Assembly (NCBI GenBank): GCA_964035545.1
Contig: OZ037766.1
Span: 12,576,722 to 12,640,721, forward strand
Direction: 5' to 3'
DNA length: 64,000 nucleotides
Source: Bugula neritina
Lineage: Eukaryota; Animalia; Bryozoa
The translations under genes and the position numbers were made by a program. Under the pieces are notes generated by a model. That model was not told the origin of the DNA and did not search any database. It was given only the letters and a program-made list of their open reading frames with translations. How positions within the stretch are numbered: the first letter of the stretch is position 1; every line of letters starts with the position of its first letter. This document shows, piece after piece, positions 4,374 through 44,791 of this stretch.

Positions 4374-7352
4374 TGCCTCATCATCAGCACAAAATAGGCC
4401 AAGCAGGCGACTAACACAGCTCCGACATGGATCTTTGCCTTCGAAGTTAAACAGAGCTGGAATACCAGATACGAGATTTGTTGAAAGCGAACCCGAATAC
4501 CTATACACTTCTCCTTTGTTGGAGATAGGCCCTATATATCATTATAGGGCTAGGCAGGTAGGTGGAAATCACAACTATGTTACCCTAATTTTAAAATAGT
4601 CAACAAAAATATGACAACTATATAAAGTTATTGTCAAATAATAAGTTTATAGGCAAGCAAGCTCAGTAGGGTAAAATGCAGACTAAAAGCTTGTTTTGTC
4701 TACTGCTGGTCAAAAAGCAAAATGATGTCACCTTTCTCTGTTTTAATGAAGATATTTCATGATGTTGTAGCTAAGTGATTTAGCAAATACTGAATCCTTT
4801 GTCTATAACTGTAGAACATTGAAAGTAAAAACAGAAGGCGGGCCAGTTCGGGAGACATGTCAAAGATTAGACAGTCTACACCGAATCTGCACAACCCTGG
4901 TTACCATAGACAACTCACTGAAAATCAAGTAGTGGCTTATGTTTTGCAACCAGATGGTACAATGGCTGCTGTCAGGTAATCTTACAGCAGGGTAGGGGCA
5001 GTACATCATACTATGTAGTACAAATATGGCTATTATAATTATTATGATCAATTATGGCTGCTGTGTCAAAACAAGATTAAATTTGAACTTGATATTTTAT
5101 TACAAAAAACCACTATCCCATGTTACTAGTAATTGTGTGGCTTGGCCTTATGGTATTTTGTATTAAATATAACCAATATAATATTTAGTATACAATATTA
5201 TTGCAAGGCTAAAGCCAGCCACACAATACTAGTAAGGTAGAATAGTGGCCATAACATGATGCCTAATATAAAGTTAATTTACCATCCAACAAAACCATGA
5301 TGCTTTAACCCAATGACTTGGTTAATTTTTAAGCTGTTTATGGTAAATACTTTTTAATCTCTATAGGCCTACTACATTCACATTTGTCTAGCCTCTTTCT
5401 GGTCTATGTAATAAAAAGGTCCAATCAGCATAGTTATGAGCAACTAGATGCCAAATGTTTTATAAAGCAAACTGTTGTAGCTCATACAATCTCTCAAATT
5501 GGTTTTTTATTTTAAGTTAATGGACATGCAGTCAAAAATGGAAGCTGCTATTATACAGCCTTACGTTATTAAGAGAAATTTGCAATAAAAATTTTCTATA
5601 CTTCAATTTAAAAGTTATACTTTTTCTTTATGTAATAAAGATAGGGTTATTTACAATATATTTTTATAACTTCAATTTTTGGTAAATGTTTAGTGAACAG
5701 GTCTACTATAATGTGAATACTCAACCACAAGGCTTTAAGTGTAAATTCATTTTTCTAATGGGTTATTTAGATGGGATGATAGAAGTGCATTGAGGAGCAA
5801 CTATTCTGTATTGACTGCCCTTCAGGATGAGCAGAAAGCAAACAAAGTAGGAAAGACAACTGGTAGAATACAAAGTGTGTCTAATCCTTCTGCAAGATTA
5901 CCACCAGATGTTCTCAAGTGGTTGACAGATTGTAAAAGTGATACCAACAGTGAGAGGATACTACCATGCTATCATAAATGAAATGAAAAAATTATTTTCT
6001 GTTAATTAGATTTACATAGTTTCTGATGCACACTAAACTAATCAAATAATTTTATTTGTTTTTTATACAGAGCTAGTAATCTTAACTGTAGCTTTTATCA
6101 TTAAACCTGTACATGATATTTTACAGATAATATGAAACCAGGGTTATCCATTAGCTTCAATCAGAAATCTAGAAGCCGCTCTGTGGGCCCAGTTACCAAC
6201 CGCCTAGTGGCTACATCACCACACCATTACACTCTTTTGACTAGCTCCAGTCAACAAAACCAAGTTAGATCAAACAATCAGAAGGTTGGGAAAGTCTCTA
6301 GATCTTCTTCACAAGACACCTGCTCTCCAGAGTCACCCAATTATTATCATACTTTAACCAACCCTGATGGTAACCATAGCCCACATTATCCAAATGGCAA
6401 AGGCAGAGTAGGTAGTCCAAGTTCTCCAAAAGAAAAAATATATGTATCTATAGTACCAAGCCACCCTCATCGCACTACAAGTAGTTTTAAAGAGCTTAAG
6501 CCAACTAATCAGGCCAGTCTCGCCAAAGTTTCGACCTCTAGTCAGCAGCTTTTCCCAAATAATTCTCCTAGTCAACATAGTTCAAGCAACTTGAAATCAA
6601 AAACAAATAGCTCGAATGATATGATAATTTTCGAAAACCAGTCTGACGAATGGGCACCAAAACCAACACATGGGAGAACACTCACTGCTCCTGATGTCCA
6701 GTTTCAGAGGAGAATATCAAGCATGAGGTCATCTCAGACTCCAAACAAACACGGAGTTGATTGTTCACCTGATGGCATAAAATATGCAAAAGGTATGAAC
6801 TGCTTTCAAGTAACCCAACACATATTCCTCTAGTATAAACACTGCTGATCATGTTAGCTACTTCATGTCATACATTTATGATTGCTCTACTGTAGCTACC
6901 ACCACTTGTGATTCTTTTGTTCATTTTATTTTGTTTCTCACGTTTATTTTTTAGATTGTGCCACTAACTTGAGCTCACAGCCTAATGATTTGAAGCCTGA
7001 GAAAGTCAGATCAAACTCATCATTATCTACCACTTCTGCTCACCCATCTTCACAAAACAACCAAATTTTCAATCAAAATGCTGACATGCTATACAATGGG
7101 CAACCAACCAAAGCTCATCCATCTCATTCCTTGAATCAGCAACCGCAGCCATTTCATTCATCTGACACATGCGCAGAACAAAGGCCCACCCATTCCCGAA
7201 GACACTCTGCTGGTACTCAGTCTAATGAATACTCAAAAAGAAGGGAAAGAATGTTTTCAGTACCAATGAAGGAAGAGTTCAAATCAACTGATGAAATCTC
7301 AGTTTGGGAATATTTCAAGCATTATAAGCAATGTCCTGTAACAGATTTCTAA
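4374..7352 (+). CDS. Unidentified multi-exon protein, Ser/Pro/Asn/Gln-rich, probably disordered; 5' end uncertain
   Basis: Five phase-compatible GT-AG exons form one open frame: 4374-4557, 4815-4975, 5771-5949, 6127-6792 and 6955-7352 (stop TAA). A candidate start exon at 3991-4019 (MSTEQQYAN) is phase-compatible but has a weak donor (gtcaat). AATAAA at 7864. No domain recognised. Confidence 0.7.
5086..5276. repeat. Imperfect palindrome (MITE-like fold-back) in an intron
   Basis: ccactat..ttactagtaattgtgtggct (from 5110) pairs with agccacacaatactagtaa..atagtgg (to ~5249); outer arms aacttgatatt / aatataaagtt. Confidence 0.6.
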
Positions 7353-8652: not shown

Positions 8653-11600
8653 TTACTGTGCCATTTCGTCTTGAGGGCCTCGTTTTACTAGAGTAACAAA
8701 TGCATCGTAATCGAACAGTCCACCATGTGGCTTGGCCTCTTTCCACACTTGTCTAATCTCTTCTTCTTTGAACTGGTCACCAACATTCAATAGAAGATCT
8801 TTTACACTGTAAAATGAAATATCAAAATACTCAAGTGCTTCCCGCTGTCTAACAATTTTGTATACTATCAGAGAGCTTAATATTGATTTAATTTGGGTAA
8901 ATATAAATGCATAAAAAAAGAAATTCTATGTTTCAAAAAATCTGTACCATTTGCTTTATGTAAAGTCAAATAATATACTTTAAGAAATTTTGTTTTCCTA
9001 AACTGTAAAAACGTGTTGTATTTTCCATATGCACTAAACAGTCTACAAGTTAAAATCAGTAAGGCTACAGCTTATCAACAAACAGAAAGTACAACAGGTG
9101 ACAGAAAACCTTTGTATGCTGCTTTATGGATCAAAGTTACAACAATTATAATAAACCAATTAGCTTAAAATACAATGAGTTAACTTTTTATTTTTATAAT
9201 GTATGTTAGGAGTTATTGCAAATTTAAAAGCATTTGACCGAAAAAAGACTTTTATAGGTGTGAGAGCAAATTCATGGTTATATTCGCTATGAAAACCATT
9301 GCCCTTGAGTATGCCAGTGTTTGCTGCTGCAATATACTCACTATTCTTCAGATAACTTTCCTTTCTTTTCAGGGTCAAACTGTTCGAAAGCCTGTCTAAA
9401 TGTAGTTTCAGAATCAGTGCCTAAAATTGAGGAAAAAAATTTTCTACATAAAAACCAAACACACTAACAGCTGAATAGTTGTAGGTGATGCACCATAGAA
9501 AATTTGATGCTTTTATAATATATCGTTACCGTGCATTTTCTCTCCAAATAGTGTTAAAAATGCAGTAAAGTTGAGTTGACCAGGACATTCCTTTAGCATT
9601 TCATTGAGGTCTTTGTCTGAGGGGTTACGGCCAAGGTCGTTGTGGATTGCTTTCAAATCAGAAACATCAATGAAGCCATCTCTGTTTACATCCATCATCC
9701 CAAAAGCCTAAAATTTCAAATACAAACTTTAATTTTGTTTTTTCAATGCTATATATATAGGATATAATTTAGAATTCATTTATATAAAATTTATTACAAA
9801 TGTTATGCTTATTCAATTATATGGAATCAATAGAGAAAGTGAAATATTGATCACAATATACTAGGTATGTGTTGATCAAATGGGTTAATTAAAAATTGGA
9901 AACGTTACAGCACATGCAAAGTTCACAAACTCTAAGGAAACAGGGTCACTCAAAGTCTAAAAGTGTACATGCCACTTTATGTGTATTTGTTTATGTGTCA
10001 TCTGATTTATCTTTTTTTATTAAGTAATCTCCAAATCTTCAAATTATTTAAAAAATTGAGGTGGATCTACTGTTATGGCTATAATCACACTGTTGCTACA
10101 TAAAAATAAAGTTTAGTAGTGAAGGATAAATGAAACTAACATGCTAGCTAGGTTACAGAAAGTCTAGTTCAAACAATCTGTCATTGCTCAACCTCCTTAA
10201 ATTCTTGAATTTGATTCTGATTTAAAACTGCGAAAACATTAGAAGTAGTTCTTTGTGCCCTTTTAGGTTCTTTATCTTCTGCAGCAGCAGCAGCAGCAGG
10301 TGCAGGCTCTGCTTTCCGTGTTCTTCTATTAACTCTCTGTAATTTATTTAATGACATACAAAATATATGGGTAAACAGGGAAAGCATACAAGAACTGCAG
10401 GGTGCTTGTTATTGGTATGTGCAATAGCGGTTGCATCAGAGCCAGGGAGGGGTGCAAACTCAGCCAGCTGTTGTCTTGTCTTTTGTCTGTTGACACAAGT
10501 CTACTCAAGGGAGCAGAAATTATAAGATAGCTAGCAGCAGCATACCAATAGAATGAGAAACACATAAGGTGAATAATAAAGTCTAGCATGGCAGCAATTG
10601 AAATAAGGCTGCCCGGTTCGAAAGCAGGCTGGAGGGCAAACTTCAGCAAACCTCTTTAAATTCTTGTATTTGTGCTTGGGGAAACATTCCCAAGATATTG
10701 GTAGTTCCTTTCCTAGCCTTTTTCTGTAAACATTTGGTGTCAACTAATATTATAATTACAAATGTGTATCCATGCATTGTAGATAAGTGAGACAGAGACG
10801 ACTAAGGAGCAGTGCTCCGTAACATCCGTAGCAAGATAAACAGATAGTGGGTTGGACATTAAGCAAAGGTCTGTTTAGGTAATTTATACTCAAGTGTTGG
10901 GGGGTTTTTGGCTTCCCATACATAAAGGAATATTTGTGTAAGGCTTGCACATTGGTTATGTTTTCAAACCTCTTTAAACTCCTGGATTTGACTTTGAGGA
11001 AACATTCCCAAAACATTTCCAGATTTTCTAGCTGCCTTCTATAATTATGGATGAAATGGAGCATTTTAATATTGAAATATCGGTACTAGATTAAAATGGC
11101 AACATACTAAATTGTGTAAAACTATAGCATTATTCTAAGATTGAAATTTGGAAAAATAATTTCATGAAGAGTGCCTTGTTCGTGTAGCATTCTGCTATAG
11201 ATTGCAAAGCTCTACAATCTACATTATAGAATACAGGTATCTTATCTACAACAGTTATTGTAGAAATAATTAGGGATAGTGTATACACTAATCTAATTAT
11301 AATGCATATCCTACTAACCATCAAAATCCTGCATCTAAGCTTATGGCATCCTGCATATATGCAGAATTATAACAATATAACCTGCATGCTTAGTCTCAAC
11401 TCATGAATATAAGGCCAGTAATTGATTAGCCTGTGCTACCACATTATAGTTAGATTACAATATACTGAGAAAGTTATCAATGAGTATAGACATACTGCTA
11501 ATTTCTGTTTCTCCGAATTCTGCAATAACATAAATAATTTACTAAGTATGTTAGAATTAGTATGCAGGCATCTAGGCTCAAACAGCTGATAATTTGAAAA

Positions 11601-12373
11601 GCTTTCATGAATTTGAAAGTATATGCAGAAACTTAAAATACACATTTATTTACTTTATGAGACTTGAGAGCCGTGGTTTAGAAATGTTTCATTAGTATTT
11701 CGTATAGAAAAAAGTGATATGCATTTATTTTGTATACAAATCTGTCCTTGGTGTGGCTCATGTAATATACGTTTGTGCTTGTGCTTAATTTTCAGGCTAT
11801 AGCTGTTAATTTCCATCAAACGGGTTAGACTATGTAAATATCAATATTAGCTTAATATTTTCTAGCCAAAGCAATGTATGGACCAAAATATTGTAAAAAA
11901 AAAATCAGATTTCTATGTTATAGAATATAGAGAATGCATTGAATGCAGTGCTAAGCTACATGTTGAATTAGATATACCTGGTCAACTTATTGTTAGTAAA
12001 AACAGATGGTTAATGAAAAAATTCACCAAAAGTTTGTTCTAATATACACAGAATGAAAACGCCATAAGAGAAAATGGTTTATAACAAAAGCATAGGTATA
12101 TCAACTGAACGCATTGTAAGAAATTTGCCAGAGCATATGTGCTAACATAGGATATTATATCTTATCATATTGAATTATAGTAGGCTACAGCTGTTTATGA
12201 TTCTTAGGCCATGTTACTGGGACGCTACACCAGCCCCCCTACCCTTCTACCTATCACACTGATTTATAATATAGCAAACATTTCAATGCTCTGTAAAAAA
12301 ATATATACTAAAATTAGCAAAACTTTTAATGTTTGTATAATAAAATTTTAGGTTTACTTACATCTTCTGCCAT
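8653..12373 (-). CDS. Myosin II regulatory light chain (EF-hand)
   Basis: Coding exons: 12373-12362 (MAED); one of three alternative exon 2 copies (11038-10970, 10723-10652, 10336-10193); 9707-9530 (AFGMMDVNRDGFIDVSDL...GQLNFTAFLTLFGEKMH); 9420-9342 (GTDSETTFRQAFEQFD...); 8806-8653 (VKDLLLNVGDQF...FDYDAFVTLVKRGPQDEMAQ*). All junctions are GT-AG and in phase. The EF-hand DVNRDGFID and QIQEFKEAF are RLC hallmarks. Probable 5'UTR exon with a G|GTAAGT donor at 13278. Confidence 0.96.
10193..10336 (-). CDS. RLC alternative exon 2C (RVNRRTRKAEPAPAAAAAAEDKEPKRAQRTTSNVFAVLNQNQIQEFKE)
   Basis: 144 nt, phase 0-0, CAG acceptor, GAG|gttgag donor; carries the canonical MLCK-type site KRAQRTTSNVF. Confidence 0.92.
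10652..10723 (-). CDS. RLC alternative exon 2B (KKARKGTTNILGMFPQAQIQEFKE)
   Basis: 72 nt, phase 0-0, CAG acceptor, GAG|gtttgc donor. Confidence 0.88.
10970..11038 (-). CDS. RLC alternative exon 2A (KAARKSGNVLGMFPQSQIQEFKE)
   Basis: 69 nt, phase 0-0, TAG acceptor, GAG|gtttga donor; homologous to the other two exon 2 copies. Confidence 0.88.
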
Positions 12374-13488
12374 TTTGCCTACAAAAAAGATTATATAAAT
12401 TGTAGAGGTGTATTTGCTGTGTGTATAGCAAACATATTACAGCGCAGTGTAGTTAAACATAGAATAGTATAATATAACTAAACAAAGAGAGGCATGGGCT
12501 TAATTATTGCATGATGCATTTCATTACATCTAAAGCCAGCTACTGACTTTAAAGCAAGTGGGTATGATATTTATCTACAGCTGCAGCTGCATTTAACCAC
12601 TCCACTATTTTCTGTAGTTTACAGAAAACAAAGCTTCTTAAATCAATTGAACTAAAGCAAATAAATACCTATTCAAAATAATTTTTAAAATTTATAGAAG
12701 AGATGTAGAAAATCACAGCCACAAAATATTTAGTTTATAATTACAAAATCAAGGAATTAGTTCCCTTGTTAACTGACAACTGATAACTGACAGTTTTACT
12801 GATGGATGCAATTAGTAATTACTGCATGCAGTAAAGCAGACCAACAACAACCTAAGAAACTGCTTGATTGAAAAAGTGTATTGAGTGATAGTTGACAAAA
12901 ATGCTAAAGATAAAAGGAGAAATTAAAGTTTGTCATATTAAAACTGAGTTAGTGTAAATATTGCTACTATAATCCTAAGTTTATAGTAATGATTAAATTG
13001 TAAAACTATAATATAATTGTAAAATATTCAAGTGATTTATATATGAAAAATAATAACTTAAAAGTTTTAGAAAAACTACAAAAAACCTATTCTATGTAAG
13101 CAATTTAAACACTGTAATTAATCTCTTAAAGCTTTAAAATTAGAGCTTATAGGCATAGGATATAACATGAATAAAATATTGAGTGATTAAATTTATTTAA
13201 TTTAAACAGCTTGTAAAAATATTACAATGCTATTTTTCCTATAAATTGTAAGATATGCTAATATAGACTAAACTTACCAAGTGTAGTAGATATTAACAGA
13301 GGGAGAAAAAAGAAGAGTAAGGGTGTTGACTTGTGAGTGTTGTCAAGCTAAGCTACTGTCCAAGTGATTTGAGCAATCTACCTGTTTCCTGCAGTGCACA
13401 CAAGCTTGAGTTGTCCCTTAGCCGCTTAACCGCACCCACAAATGCTTGTAACTTATACCATTTAAGTCTACAAATGCCCATAAAATTA

Positions 13489-13515: not shown

Positions 13516-15856
13516 TAATCTCAAGGAATGAGTAGGATCCCTCAAACTAACGATACCTGCATGCACTAAGTAAGTGAATGGCCTACAGAGCTCTGTAATA
13601 GGATAATAACTGTAAGCCTACATAGTGGAGGTAGACAAATGTGCAACTGGTAATTACTAATTAGCAAATGCATCAAGAAGCTGGTAATTAGAAAAATTTG
13701 AGTACATTCTACAGACTATGAACTCAGCACTGCAGCTGAATATGATCTGTTTCTAATAGACTTAACGGGCAATATTGCTCAAGTGCTTTTCTAAAAAATC
13801 ATAAAGAAGTCATTATAAGGAAAAAATATCTAATAATTTACAAGCAGATGCAAAATTTAAATGTTGAGGGAGGAAATTTAAGGTTTTATTATATATTATC
13901 TCCAAATAGTAACCTACTAAAACTTTTTGTACGTTATAAGTTATGCATTGCGGAAAGGATTTCTCATTTTTGAAACTCAAGTATTATAGAAAATAAAATA
14001 TATTATTATCTTGTACCTCTTCAACAGCAAATGAATTTCTTGCACATGATGCATTGAGTTTTGATAAACAGTTGGGATCTATTATAACCGTCAAAACTCC
14101 TGGAATCCAGCATCATGTGAGTTATCGGTTTAACAAGAGCAGTAATAATTGTAATTTTACTATATATACACCTTGATATTTCTAATATACATAGATTAGA
14201 AACTTTACAAAGCTAAGAAACTGTGATCATAGCAGAGCTGTGTGATGAAAATAAATTTAAAAATACTAGAATTATTTGCACAAGTTACATAATATTTCAT
14301 AAAAGAATTTTAGACATTGTCATTTTGATTCTAATTTTATAGTCTGATCAATGTAGGGCAAAGTCTCGGACATGGTAATTGGTTGTTTTACCTGGTATAT
14401 TGATCATAAAATTTTAAAACGACTAAAAGTACAAATTTCAGAAACACATTTTATATTTTACAACGCGTCTAGCCATTAAATTACGTAACCTATTTATAAA
14501 AACTAATTAAAGTTAAAGCTAAGCACCTTTTCTTTCTCCTACTGCCAGTACCAGTTTTATTTAGTTCTAGCTTACGTTTACTCTTTCTGATGACATGCCT
14601 GTTGCTAGTTTCTCTAAAGGTTTCTCTTTCACTTCATGAACAAAACTTGCATGTGTTAACACATTAACATGTATTTTATGTGACTATAAATTTAAGTCAC
14701 GTGGTACATGCTGCCCTACTGCATTTATCAAAAGGTATATTTATTTAAATTAATAATTTTACATTATTTTCCAACATGTTGAAAGTATTCAATAAGGGAC
14801 TGTTCATAGAGTGATGATGTAAAATGCTTCAGCTTTAAAAACTTTAAGATTTATTCGTTATCTCTTATGACTAATTATTCCATACGCTGAGATTACAACT
14901 ACGGTGAAACTTCCATCATCATAGCATAAGTGTAGTGCAGCATGTGATAGTTCTAGATTACTTGGTGCTGCACAAACTCGAAAGAAATATAATTACTTTT
15001 ATTATGGAGAAGAAATTTCTGGTCATCATATGTGCATACACCTTAATTATAATGATTTATATATCACGTATTGCAAGTGAAAGCTATCCCATATTAATAA
15101 CAAAGCTTAATACAAACATTATAAACGAATATGCATAGGTATATTGCAAGAGCTATTCTATTGTGAGAACTTAAGCCTTATTGCAGGTAAACTGCTGCAT
15201 ATAATTAACAAAGGAATCATACTTTTATAACTGACGATATGAGGAATGATCGGATTAAGTGTTGTTGGTTAGTTGTAAAAACTCGGGCAACTTTCTAATT
15301 GATATTCAGAGCCTATCAAACATATTATCAATAAGTATTGACATGGGTATGTAGTATATTTTATTACACACACGCACACTAAGCTCAATATCTGCTGATT
15401 GAATTTGAACATTGGCTATGATTATGATGCATAAAATAATTGGTTTTACAAATGATTTTTTACATGCTTTTCCCCTTTATTGCCTTCCTTCATTGTCCTT
15501 TATTTGATTTGCATATTGCAAGTGTAACTGCACGTATATTTTATTCAGGCCTCACAGCTAACATTTATAACAGTTTATGCAAGCACCAGGTCTACTATAA
15601 CTGCTATATTTACTGTACAGATTAAAATAAGTAGCCGAGGAGCAGTATTGCTATATTAGTATAGGTACCTTACTAAAAATACTGAATTGAGATACAGCAA
15701 ACAACACACAGTAAAGACTCATGAGGCTTGAAGACTTGAAGAAACTGATCTTAGGCAAGAAAGCTGGAATTTCGACACTAAAGTGCTTAGACTTAATTCA
15801 GGCACAAGGGCGCATAAAGAACTATTGGAGTTAGGACTGAAACTTTGTTATAAAAC

Positions 15857-27346: not shown

Positions 27347-44791
<17,445 letters not shown>

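What the first reader, a model, noticed from the sequence alone, without database searches (positions are those of the whole stretch)
10193..11038. Three tandem, homologous exon 2 cassettes swap the myosin RLC phosphorylation switch (Ser / Thr / Gly)
Seen: between the MAED exon and the EF-hand exon lie three phase 0-0 exons, each ending QIQEFKE|gt. The ORF track shows only exon 2C in the correct frame. At the position equivalent to vertebrate smooth-muscle Thr18-Ser19 (QRATSNVF), 2C has RTTSNVF, 2B has KGTTNIL and 2A has RKSGNVL, so the main phospho-acceptor is Ser, Thr or Gly. Exon 2C alone adds a basic then Pro/Ala-rich extension (RVNRRTRKAEPAPAAAAAA), similar in character to actin-contacting light-chain extensions. 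Established (from memory): scallop striated and catch-muscle RLC isoforms differ in this same segment through alternative splicing. Inference: one gene yields three myosin regulatory modes for different muscle types. Including two cassettes would duplicate the start of helix A, so they should be mutually exclusive.
Basis: partly seen in the sequence, partly recalled or inferred. Interest (0 to 1): 0.85.

Follow-up and report, generated by a model that had tools for sequence, protein, structure and literature searches.

The report
Swappable myosin light-chain regulatory exons
A bryozoan muscle myosin light-chain gene picks one of three alternative exons for the segment that carries the phosphorylation site; this is real and spliced, but snails, clams, scallops and other bryozoans use the same gene design, so it is a new example of a known kind.

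Summary
The gene is the muscle myosin regulatory light chain of Bugula neritina or a very close relative (matches GenBank mlc-4). Three phase-0 cassettes lie between the MAED micro-exon and exon 3. RNA contigs from four studies splice each to exon 3, with no cassette-to-cassette joint listed; 2B is in all four runs, 2A and 2C in different ones. All three cassettes are intact and under purifying selection in three related species, always Gly/Thr/Ser at the Ser19 column. RefSeq already lists the three isoforms for Watersipora. A paralog in this genome and a land-snail genome have the same array; clam, scallop, brachiopod and nemertean isoforms differ in the same segment.

Corrections: the Pro/Ala linker of 2C is not conserved; 2A keeps an invariant Ser18, so it is not safely 'non-phosphorylatable'; muscle-type assignment and three regulatory modes are untested. 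No conserved RNA pairing was found; weak donors and conserved Rbfox-type and MBNL-type motifs suggest protein-controlled choice.

Verdict: new member of a known kind. An ancestral spiralian array is plausible; I found no paper describing it. The scan had not noted this elsewhere in this genome.

The parts
14017..14125 (-). upstream non-coding exon (3' end at 14017; 5' end approximate)
   Evidence: 105-letter loose end of an X4 contig at 13469 matches the bases ending at 14019; donor GT at 14016
13278..13467 (-). 5' UTR exon, donor GTAAGT
   Evidence: RNA contigs 13277-13469 in X4, X5, joined to the micro-exon
12362..12378 (-). 17-nt micro-exon with start codon (12373), codes MAED; strong donor GTAAGT
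   Evidence: its letters appear as loose ends beside 10723, 10336 and 13277 in RNA contigs
10970..11038 (-). cassette 2A, 23 aa; Ser18 (11023-11021), Gly at the Ser19 column (11020-11018); weak donor GTTTGA
   Evidence: spliced to exon 3 in X1 (depth 1575) and X2 (551), absent from X4, X5; RKSGNVL invariant in 4 species
10771..10776 (-). TGCATG (Rbfox-type motif) in the intron after 2A
   Evidence: present in this intron in 3 of 4 species, 0.4 expected, P 0.011 uncorrected; binding not shown
10652..10723 (-). cassette 2B, 24 aa; Thr at the Ser19 column (10702-10700); weak donor GTTTGC
   Evidence: spliced to exon 3 in all four runs and to the micro-exon in X2, X4, X5; Thr kept in 4 of 4 species
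10383..10648 (-). YGCY-rich intron stretch after 2B (MBNL-type motifs, 12 copies)
   Evidence: 35 observed against 12.8 expected over 4 species; binding not shown
10193..10336 (-). cassette 2C, 48 aa; basic start, variable linker, canonical RAQRTTS site (Ser 10243-10241); weak donor GTTGAG
   Evidence: spliced to micro-exon (X4, X5) and to exon 3 (X4); E 4.4e-05 to MYL9 N-terminus
10141..10192 (-). 52-nt extension of 2C to an alternative donor GTTAGT at 10140; in-frame stop at 10183-10181
   Evidence: one contig in X5, depth 54.7, flagged 'between: not known'; site not kept in L009 or L014
9913..9918 (-). TGCATG (Rbfox-type motif) in the intron after 2C
   Evidence: present in 4 of 4 species, in L013, and 4 times in the paralog; P 0.009 uncorrected
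9530..9707 (-). exon 3, common; EF-hand 1 and helices to the linker
   Evidence: best PDB match squid mantle RLC 3i5f_B, E 4.9e-25; joints
9342..9420 (-). exon 4, common
   Evidence: joints 9420/9530 and 8806/9342 in RNA contigs; translation
8653..8806 (-). coding part of exon 5, common; keeps the equivalents of scallop Gly117 (8781-8779) and Lys149 (8685-8683); stop 8655-8653
   Evidence: 50 of 50 residues identical to B. neritina mlc-4; positions read

Best explanation
This is the spiralian muscle-type myosin RLC gene. A constant micro-exon (MAED) is spliced to exactly one of three duplicated phase-0 exons and then to the constant EF-hand exons (shown). Each cassette codes the whole phosphorylation segment up to mid-helix A, so the choice changes the kinase site and the N-terminal charge and leaves the heavy-chain-binding body unchanged (shown from sequence). 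2C carries a canonical MLCK-type Ser19 site, 2B a Thr19 site with weaker context, 2A a site shifted to Ser18 or lost (inferred). The choice differs between samples (seen in contigs) and probably between muscle types or life stages (inferred). Exclusivity most likely comes from uniformly weak donors that each need an activating RNA-binding protein, with Rbfox-type motifs after 2A and 2C and MBNL-type motifs after 2B (inferred). On/off control is probably calcium at the essential light chain, as in molluscs, with the cassette tuning it (inferred from the kept Gly117 and Lys149 equivalents). It is the same kind of system as the scallop striated/catch RLC isoforms.
For: Splice joints for all three cassettes, none between cassettes, and cassette depths that roughly add up to the common exons: X1 1575+1752 against 2872, X2 551+595 against 1137-1282. 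Intact cassettes in the same order in three other species; among changed codons, 11% (2A), 34% (2B) and 12% (2C) change the amino acid, against 23% for exon 3. Watersipora RefSeq X1/X2/X3 each hold one cassette. Paralog on C1 with the same skeleton and three cassettes. Snail genome with micro-exon and three tandem cassettes. Scallop chains 3pn7_B and 2os8_B differ only before AFTM. Donor and motif patterns. Muscle-RLC clade 100/100.
Against: All RNA evidence is from contigs, which drop rare forms and cannot give levels; the RNA runs are from strains a few percent different from the window. No tissue or stage labels. No phosphorylation data. The motif tests were chosen among 7 motifs x 4 introns, and the TGCATG P values would not survive strict correction. 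In X5 the only listed 2C form uses a donor that adds a stop.
Confidence: 0.8

Rival explanations
1. One reading: three discrete regulatory modes (phospho-Ser, phospho-Thr, non-phosphorylatable Gly), each for one muscle type, with an actin-binding Pro/Ala arm on 2C.
For: The Gly/Thr/Ser column is invariant in 4 of 4 species. 2A and 2C appear in different samples. A review states that the catch-specific bivalve isoform holds a phosphorylation site (PMC12040844). 2C resembles the tarantula RLC extension.
Against: Ser18 is invariant in 2A; MLCK phosphorylates the remaining residue in single S19A or T18A mutants (PMC4914028). The Pro/Ala linker is not conserved. The same review says the role of the catch isoform is unknown. 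A second gene adds further N-termini, so a one-gene, three-muscle mapping is too simple.
Confidence: 0.2
2. The cassettes tune the relaxed state through charge, length and the helix-A surface rather than through phosphorylation; the Ser/Thr/Gly column is secondary.
For: Cassettes also differ in the conserved LGMFPQ against FAVLNQ block and in length. Molluscan myosin is switched by calcium at the ELC (PMC4914028). Gly occurs at this column in many unnamed, annelid-like RLCs.
Against: The full basic motif upstream of Ser19 is kept in 2C and in the paralog's C and B cassettes, which suggests selection on a kinase site.
Confidence: 0.3
3. Exclusivity is set by competing RNA base-pairing (docking site and selectors, as in Dscam) or by steric crowding.
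For: In the snail the first two cassettes are only 67 nt apart, which could be steric. One window pair of introns gives a duplex below its shuffles (-104.6 against -76.7).
Against: Introns between cassettes are 211-456 nt in four species; no conserved intronic blocks; no 8-mer shared by all four and no complementary pair that recurs. Double inclusion stays in frame, so decay cannot filter it.
Confidence: 0.15
4. 2A or 2B are dead duplicates.
For: 2A is missing in two of four runs; the GenBank model of B. neritina has no cassette at all.
Against: Both are spliced at high depth, intact in relatives, under purifying selection and present in relatives' transcripts.
Confidence: 0.01

Closest known systems
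Scallop striated and catch-muscle RLC isoforms (PDB 2os8_B, 3pn7_B; Perreault-Micale et al. 1996, recalled from memory, paper not held)
   Same: One RLC body with alternative N-terminal segments that end at the same KE|AF boundary and differ in the basic residues before the Ser19 column.
   Different: The scallop short form keeps Ser at the Ser19 column and loses the basic cluster; here the acceptor itself changes to Thr or Gly. Bryozoans have two such genes. Cassette sequences are not one-to-one orthologues in the cassette tree.
Watersipora subatra RefSeq isoforms XP_067938162/3/4 (X1-X3) and paralog XP_067940718/23
   Same: Orthologous gene; X1, X2, X3 carry 2C, 2B, 2A after MAED; the paralog has C-type and B-type forms.
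   Different: Automatic annotation only; the 2C linker is shorter and lacks the Ala run.
Gastropod muscle RLC gene (Bradybaena similaris AP039584.1; Biomphalaria, Pomacea isoforms X1-X3)
   Same: MAEE micro-exon, three tandem phase-0 cassettes with non-consensus donors, common exon starting AF; includes an EPKRAQR..SNVF form and a short Thr19 form.
   Different: Order is catch-type, C-like, B-like, against A, B, C here; first two cassettes only 67 nt apart; gastropod C-like and B-like cassettes group with each other, not with the bryozoan ones (weak support).
Vertebrate smooth/non-muscle RLC (MYL9, MYL12B), T18/S19 switch
   Same: 2C has the same RxQRxTSNVF motif.
   Different: This gene lies in the spiralian muscle clade, not the non-muscle clade. 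The genome's two non-muscle RLC genes have no intron at KE|AF and no cassettes.
Mutually exclusive exon clusters of metazoan muscle myosin heavy chain genes (PMC3912159)
   Same: Tandem duplicated exons that tune one segment of the muscle motor; known in lophotrochozoans.
   Different: That study covers heavy chains only ('light chain' has 0 occurrences); here cassette lengths differ widely (69-144 nt).

Membership tests
Muscle-type myosin RLC (spiralian) | Sequence groups with molluscan, annelid, brachiopod and flatworm muscle RLCs, apart from non-muscle RLC | tested here: met
   PDB best hits squid and scallop RLC; tree of the constant part, clade 100/100, using the stored protein P0394
Muscle-type myosin RLC (spiralian) | Residues needed for myosin-linked regulation (scallop Gly117, Lys149) | tested here: met
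   Gly at 8781-8779 and Lys at 8685-8683 by ungapped reading against 1b7t; role of K149 from PMC4914028, of the glycine from a cited title and memory
Muscle-type myosin RLC (spiralian) | Binds the second IQ motif of muscle myosin II; muscle expression | not testable with these tools
   no binding or tissue data
Cluster of mutually exclusive tandem exons | Neighbouring homologous exons, same phase, valid splice sites | tested here: met
   (10-14 of the last 19 residues identical between cassettes)
Cluster of mutually exclusive tandem exons | Each exon is used in transcripts | tested here: met
   for all three to exon 3; micro-exon-to-2A join seen only in relatives
Cluster of mutually exclusive tandem exons | Exactly one exon per mRNA | tested here: inconclusive
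   no double or skip joint listed and depths roughly add up, all transcript-derived relatives hold one cassette; but contigs drop rare variants and part of the output was cut
Cluster of mutually exclusive tandem exons | Conserved in related species | tested here: met
   L009, L010, L014, Watersipora
Scallop-type RLC N-terminal splice isoforms | Isoforms differ only before the KE|AF boundary and come from one gene | tested here: met
Scallop-type RLC N-terminal splice isoforms | Isoforms specific to muscle type; one is phosphorylated | not testable with these tools
   only a sample difference seen (2A in X1, X2; 2C in X4, X5)
Docking-site/selector RNA pairing clusters (Dscam type) | Conserved complementary intronic elements | tested here: not met
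   species may be too distant for short elements

The most novel reading that the evidence does not exclude
The micro-exon plus cassette array in the muscle RLC gene is an undescribed ancestral feature of lophotrochozoans, more than 500 million years old and shared by bryozoans, molluscs, brachiopods and nemerteans. It includes an old short class with Arg-Lys-Ser and a non-acceptor at the Ser19 column (Gly here, Arg in Tubulanus X3, Lys in the unnamed P0398) that shifts the site to Ser18, and it is read by an Rbfox/MBNL-type splicing code.
Probability: 0.4. Interest if true: 0.55.

Novelty: new member of a known kind. Interest (0 to 1): 0.35.

Why it matters
Bryozoan muscle regulation is barely studied (no relevant paper), and the GenBank model of this gene misses its whole regulatory N-terminus. 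The cassettes give exon-specific markers for muscle types and life stages and a natural Ser/Thr/Gly series on one protein body. That makes testable the open question of what RLC phosphorylation does in calcium-regulated invertebrate myosin; a 2025 review calls the role of the catch-specific isoform unknown. If the array is ancestral, the scallop catch isoform is one use of a much older splice switch. A myosin specialist who knows the scallop work would find this a good extension, not a surprise.

Tried and rejected
Pseudo-exon reading: rejected. A fourth cassette in the window: none. Conserved RNA pairing or intron blocks: none found. Decay as the filter for double inclusion: rejected, all cassettes are multiples of three. 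Conserved Pro/Ala arm: rejected. Gly as unique to this gene: rejected, also in P0185 and many annelid-like RLCs. One-to-one orthology of cassettes across phyla: not shown; the 23-residue tree has weak support and the order differs in the snail. Genomic loci for Dreissena, Pomacea and Lingula were not on record. The scallop primary papers were not held (several ids were recalled and may be wrong). A myosin-head scan of the genome added nothing.

Full report
Observation. The heptapeptide occurs three times in the window, and a relaxed form never in 30 shuffles. No fourth cassette lies between the UTR exon and exon 4. Counting back 17 residues from the common end, the column of smooth-muscle Ser19 holds Gly, Thr and Ser.

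Gene and organism. Exon 3 matches squid and scallop muscle RLC best. Exon 5 is 50 of 50 identical to Bugula neritina mlc-4 (KAF6019451.1), and exons 3 and 4 read the same by eye; that GenBank model starts inside exon 3 and lacks the cassettes. The organism is therefore B. neritina or a very close relative (inference; the genome is 216 Mb). A tree of the constant part puts the gene with its Watersipora orthologue, the two bryozoan paralogs together (96.6/98), and all of them in a spiralian muscle-RLC clade (100/100) apart from non-muscle RLCs. The genome's two non-muscle RLC genes have no intron at this point.

Splicing. Contigs of four runs from four studies, taken as RNA by guess and a few percent different from the window, show 2A to exon 3 in X1 and X2, 2B to exon 3 in all four, 2C to exon 3 in X4, and the micro-exon joined to 2B and 2C. 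The spliced joints show that they hold RNA. No joint between cassettes is listed, and cassette depths roughly add up to the depth of the common exons. The tool warns that contig depth is a poor measure and that rare forms are dropped, so exclusivity is supported, not proven. The micro-exon-to-2A joint is not in the listed rows, but relatives' proteins show it (P0359, P0470). 2A is nearly as deep as 2B in X1 and X2 and absent in X4 and X5, where spliced 2C appears. This points to regulated choice, but sample identities are coded. In X5 the only listed 2C contig runs 52 nt on to a donor at 10140, which brings an in-frame stop; this site is not conserved.

Conservation. DNA contigs of three other, unnamed species (L009, L010, L014; exon 3 is 86-91% identical) hold the three cassettes intact and in the same order. 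Most codon changes are silent: 11%, 34% and 12% of changed codons alter the amino acid in 2A, 2B and 2C, against 23% in exon 3. The Gly/Thr/Ser column never changes, nor does Ser18 of 2A. The linker of 2C varies from 37 to 48 residues of cassette length and is Pro/Ala-rich only here; the basic start is kept. RefSeq lists all three isoforms for Watersipora subatra.

Wider pattern. A paralog on contig C1 has the same exon skeleton and three cassettes: a long divergent one, a B type and a C type. Its relative L017 has B, C and a decayed remnant with a stop; L020 has one B-type exon with a consensus donor. The B and C pair is thus older than the gene duplication (inference). The snail Bradybaena has a MAEE micro-exon, three tandem phase-0 cassettes and the common exon. 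Named isoforms of Pomacea, Biomphalaria, Haliotis, Mercenaria, Dreissena, Mya, Lingula and Tubulanus differ in the same segment, and some gene predictions fuse two cassettes in tandem. Scallop chains 3pn7_B and 2os8_B are alike after the boundary and differ before it; that they are catch and striated splice forms of one gene is from memory. 2A is 18 of 20 identical to the unnamed transcript P0398 and resembles Tubulanus X3. A tree of 23 residues recovers the bryozoan cassette classes but not one-to-one matches with molluscan cassettes, and the snail order differs, so the array may be old while its members turn over.

How it works. Shown: one constant start, one of three phosphorylation segments, one constant body. 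Inferred: 2C is a canonical MLCK-type substrate; 2B has Thr with Lys instead of Arg three residues upstream; 2A has lost the main acceptor but keeps Ser18, and single T18 or S19 substitutions in smooth-muscle RLC are still phosphorylated at the remaining residue (PMC4914028). The protein keeps the equivalents of scallop Gly117 and Lys149, so calcium control through the essential light chain, tuned by the cassette, is my preferred reading; I did not examine the essential light chain. For exclusivity, introns are too long for simple crowding, double inclusion stays in frame, and no conserved pairing was found. All cassette donors are weak in four species while the micro-exon donor is GTAAGT. TGCATG lies after 2A in 3 of 4 and after 2C in 4 of 4 species (P about 0.01 each, uncorrected), and YGCY is enriched after 2B (35 against 12.8). 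That these are Rbfox and MBNL motifs is established knowledge; their use here is inference.

Comparison and verdict. It works like, and meets the testable features of, the scallop-type N-terminal RLC splice isoforms and of a mutually exclusive exon cluster. Ten literature searches found no description of the array in bryozoans or across phyla, but the library lacks most subscription papers. Earlier scan notes held nothing on it. The finding is real and mostly as described; it is a new member of a known kind. Interest 0.35.

Noticed in passing
window 10192-10140 (-): Alternative donor 52 nt past cassette 2C, used in one X5 contig; adds VEQ and a stop, a likely decay target. Not conserved in L009 or L014.
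   Followed up: partly
window about 10268-10312 (-): The Ala run of 2C is 3 nt shorter in the X4 and X5 contigs: a length polymorphism.
   Followed up: no
L005 9000-3000 (G000:C1 about 27,093,000-27,099,000, -): Second muscle RLC gene with the same exon skeleton and three cassettes; its first, 153-nt cassette is divergent, decayed in L017 and not in the Watersipora isoforms retrieved. Its expression was not tested.
   Followed up: partly
L020 4858-4929: Relative of the paralog with a single B-type exon and a consensus GTAAGT donor, unlike the weak donors in multi-cassette genes (one case).
   Followed up: partly
window 14125-14017 and 13467-13278 (-): Two non-coding 5' exons upstream of the micro-exon, seen in RNA contigs.
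   Followed up: partly
window 9680-10680: Unspliced contigs at about 1-2% of exon depth in X1 and X2 cover 2C and its flanks: pre-mRNA, retained intron or DNA.
   Followed up: no
window 6132-6833 (+): 233-codon Ser/Pro-rich open frame on the opposite strand, probably an exon of a convergent neighbouring gene.
   Followed up: no
window 15990-15870: Short GC-rich palindromic stretch in AT-rich DNA upstream of the gene, perhaps a small transposon-derived element.
   Followed up: no
P0305/P0365/P0436/P0437 (Lingula isoforms X3-X6): Lingula isoforms also differ inside exon 3 (RDPSRSDL against REPTKAEL), which hints at a second alternative exon set in that gene.
   Followed up: no
G000:C126 and C127: Myosin-head matches with almost no introns on small contigs, unlike the host's genes; possibly from another eukaryote in the assembly.
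   Followed up: no
window 27347-28262: An earlier scan note (s1-472360) reports alternative C-terminal exons of a PKA catalytic subunit here; not checked and not used.
   Followed up: no
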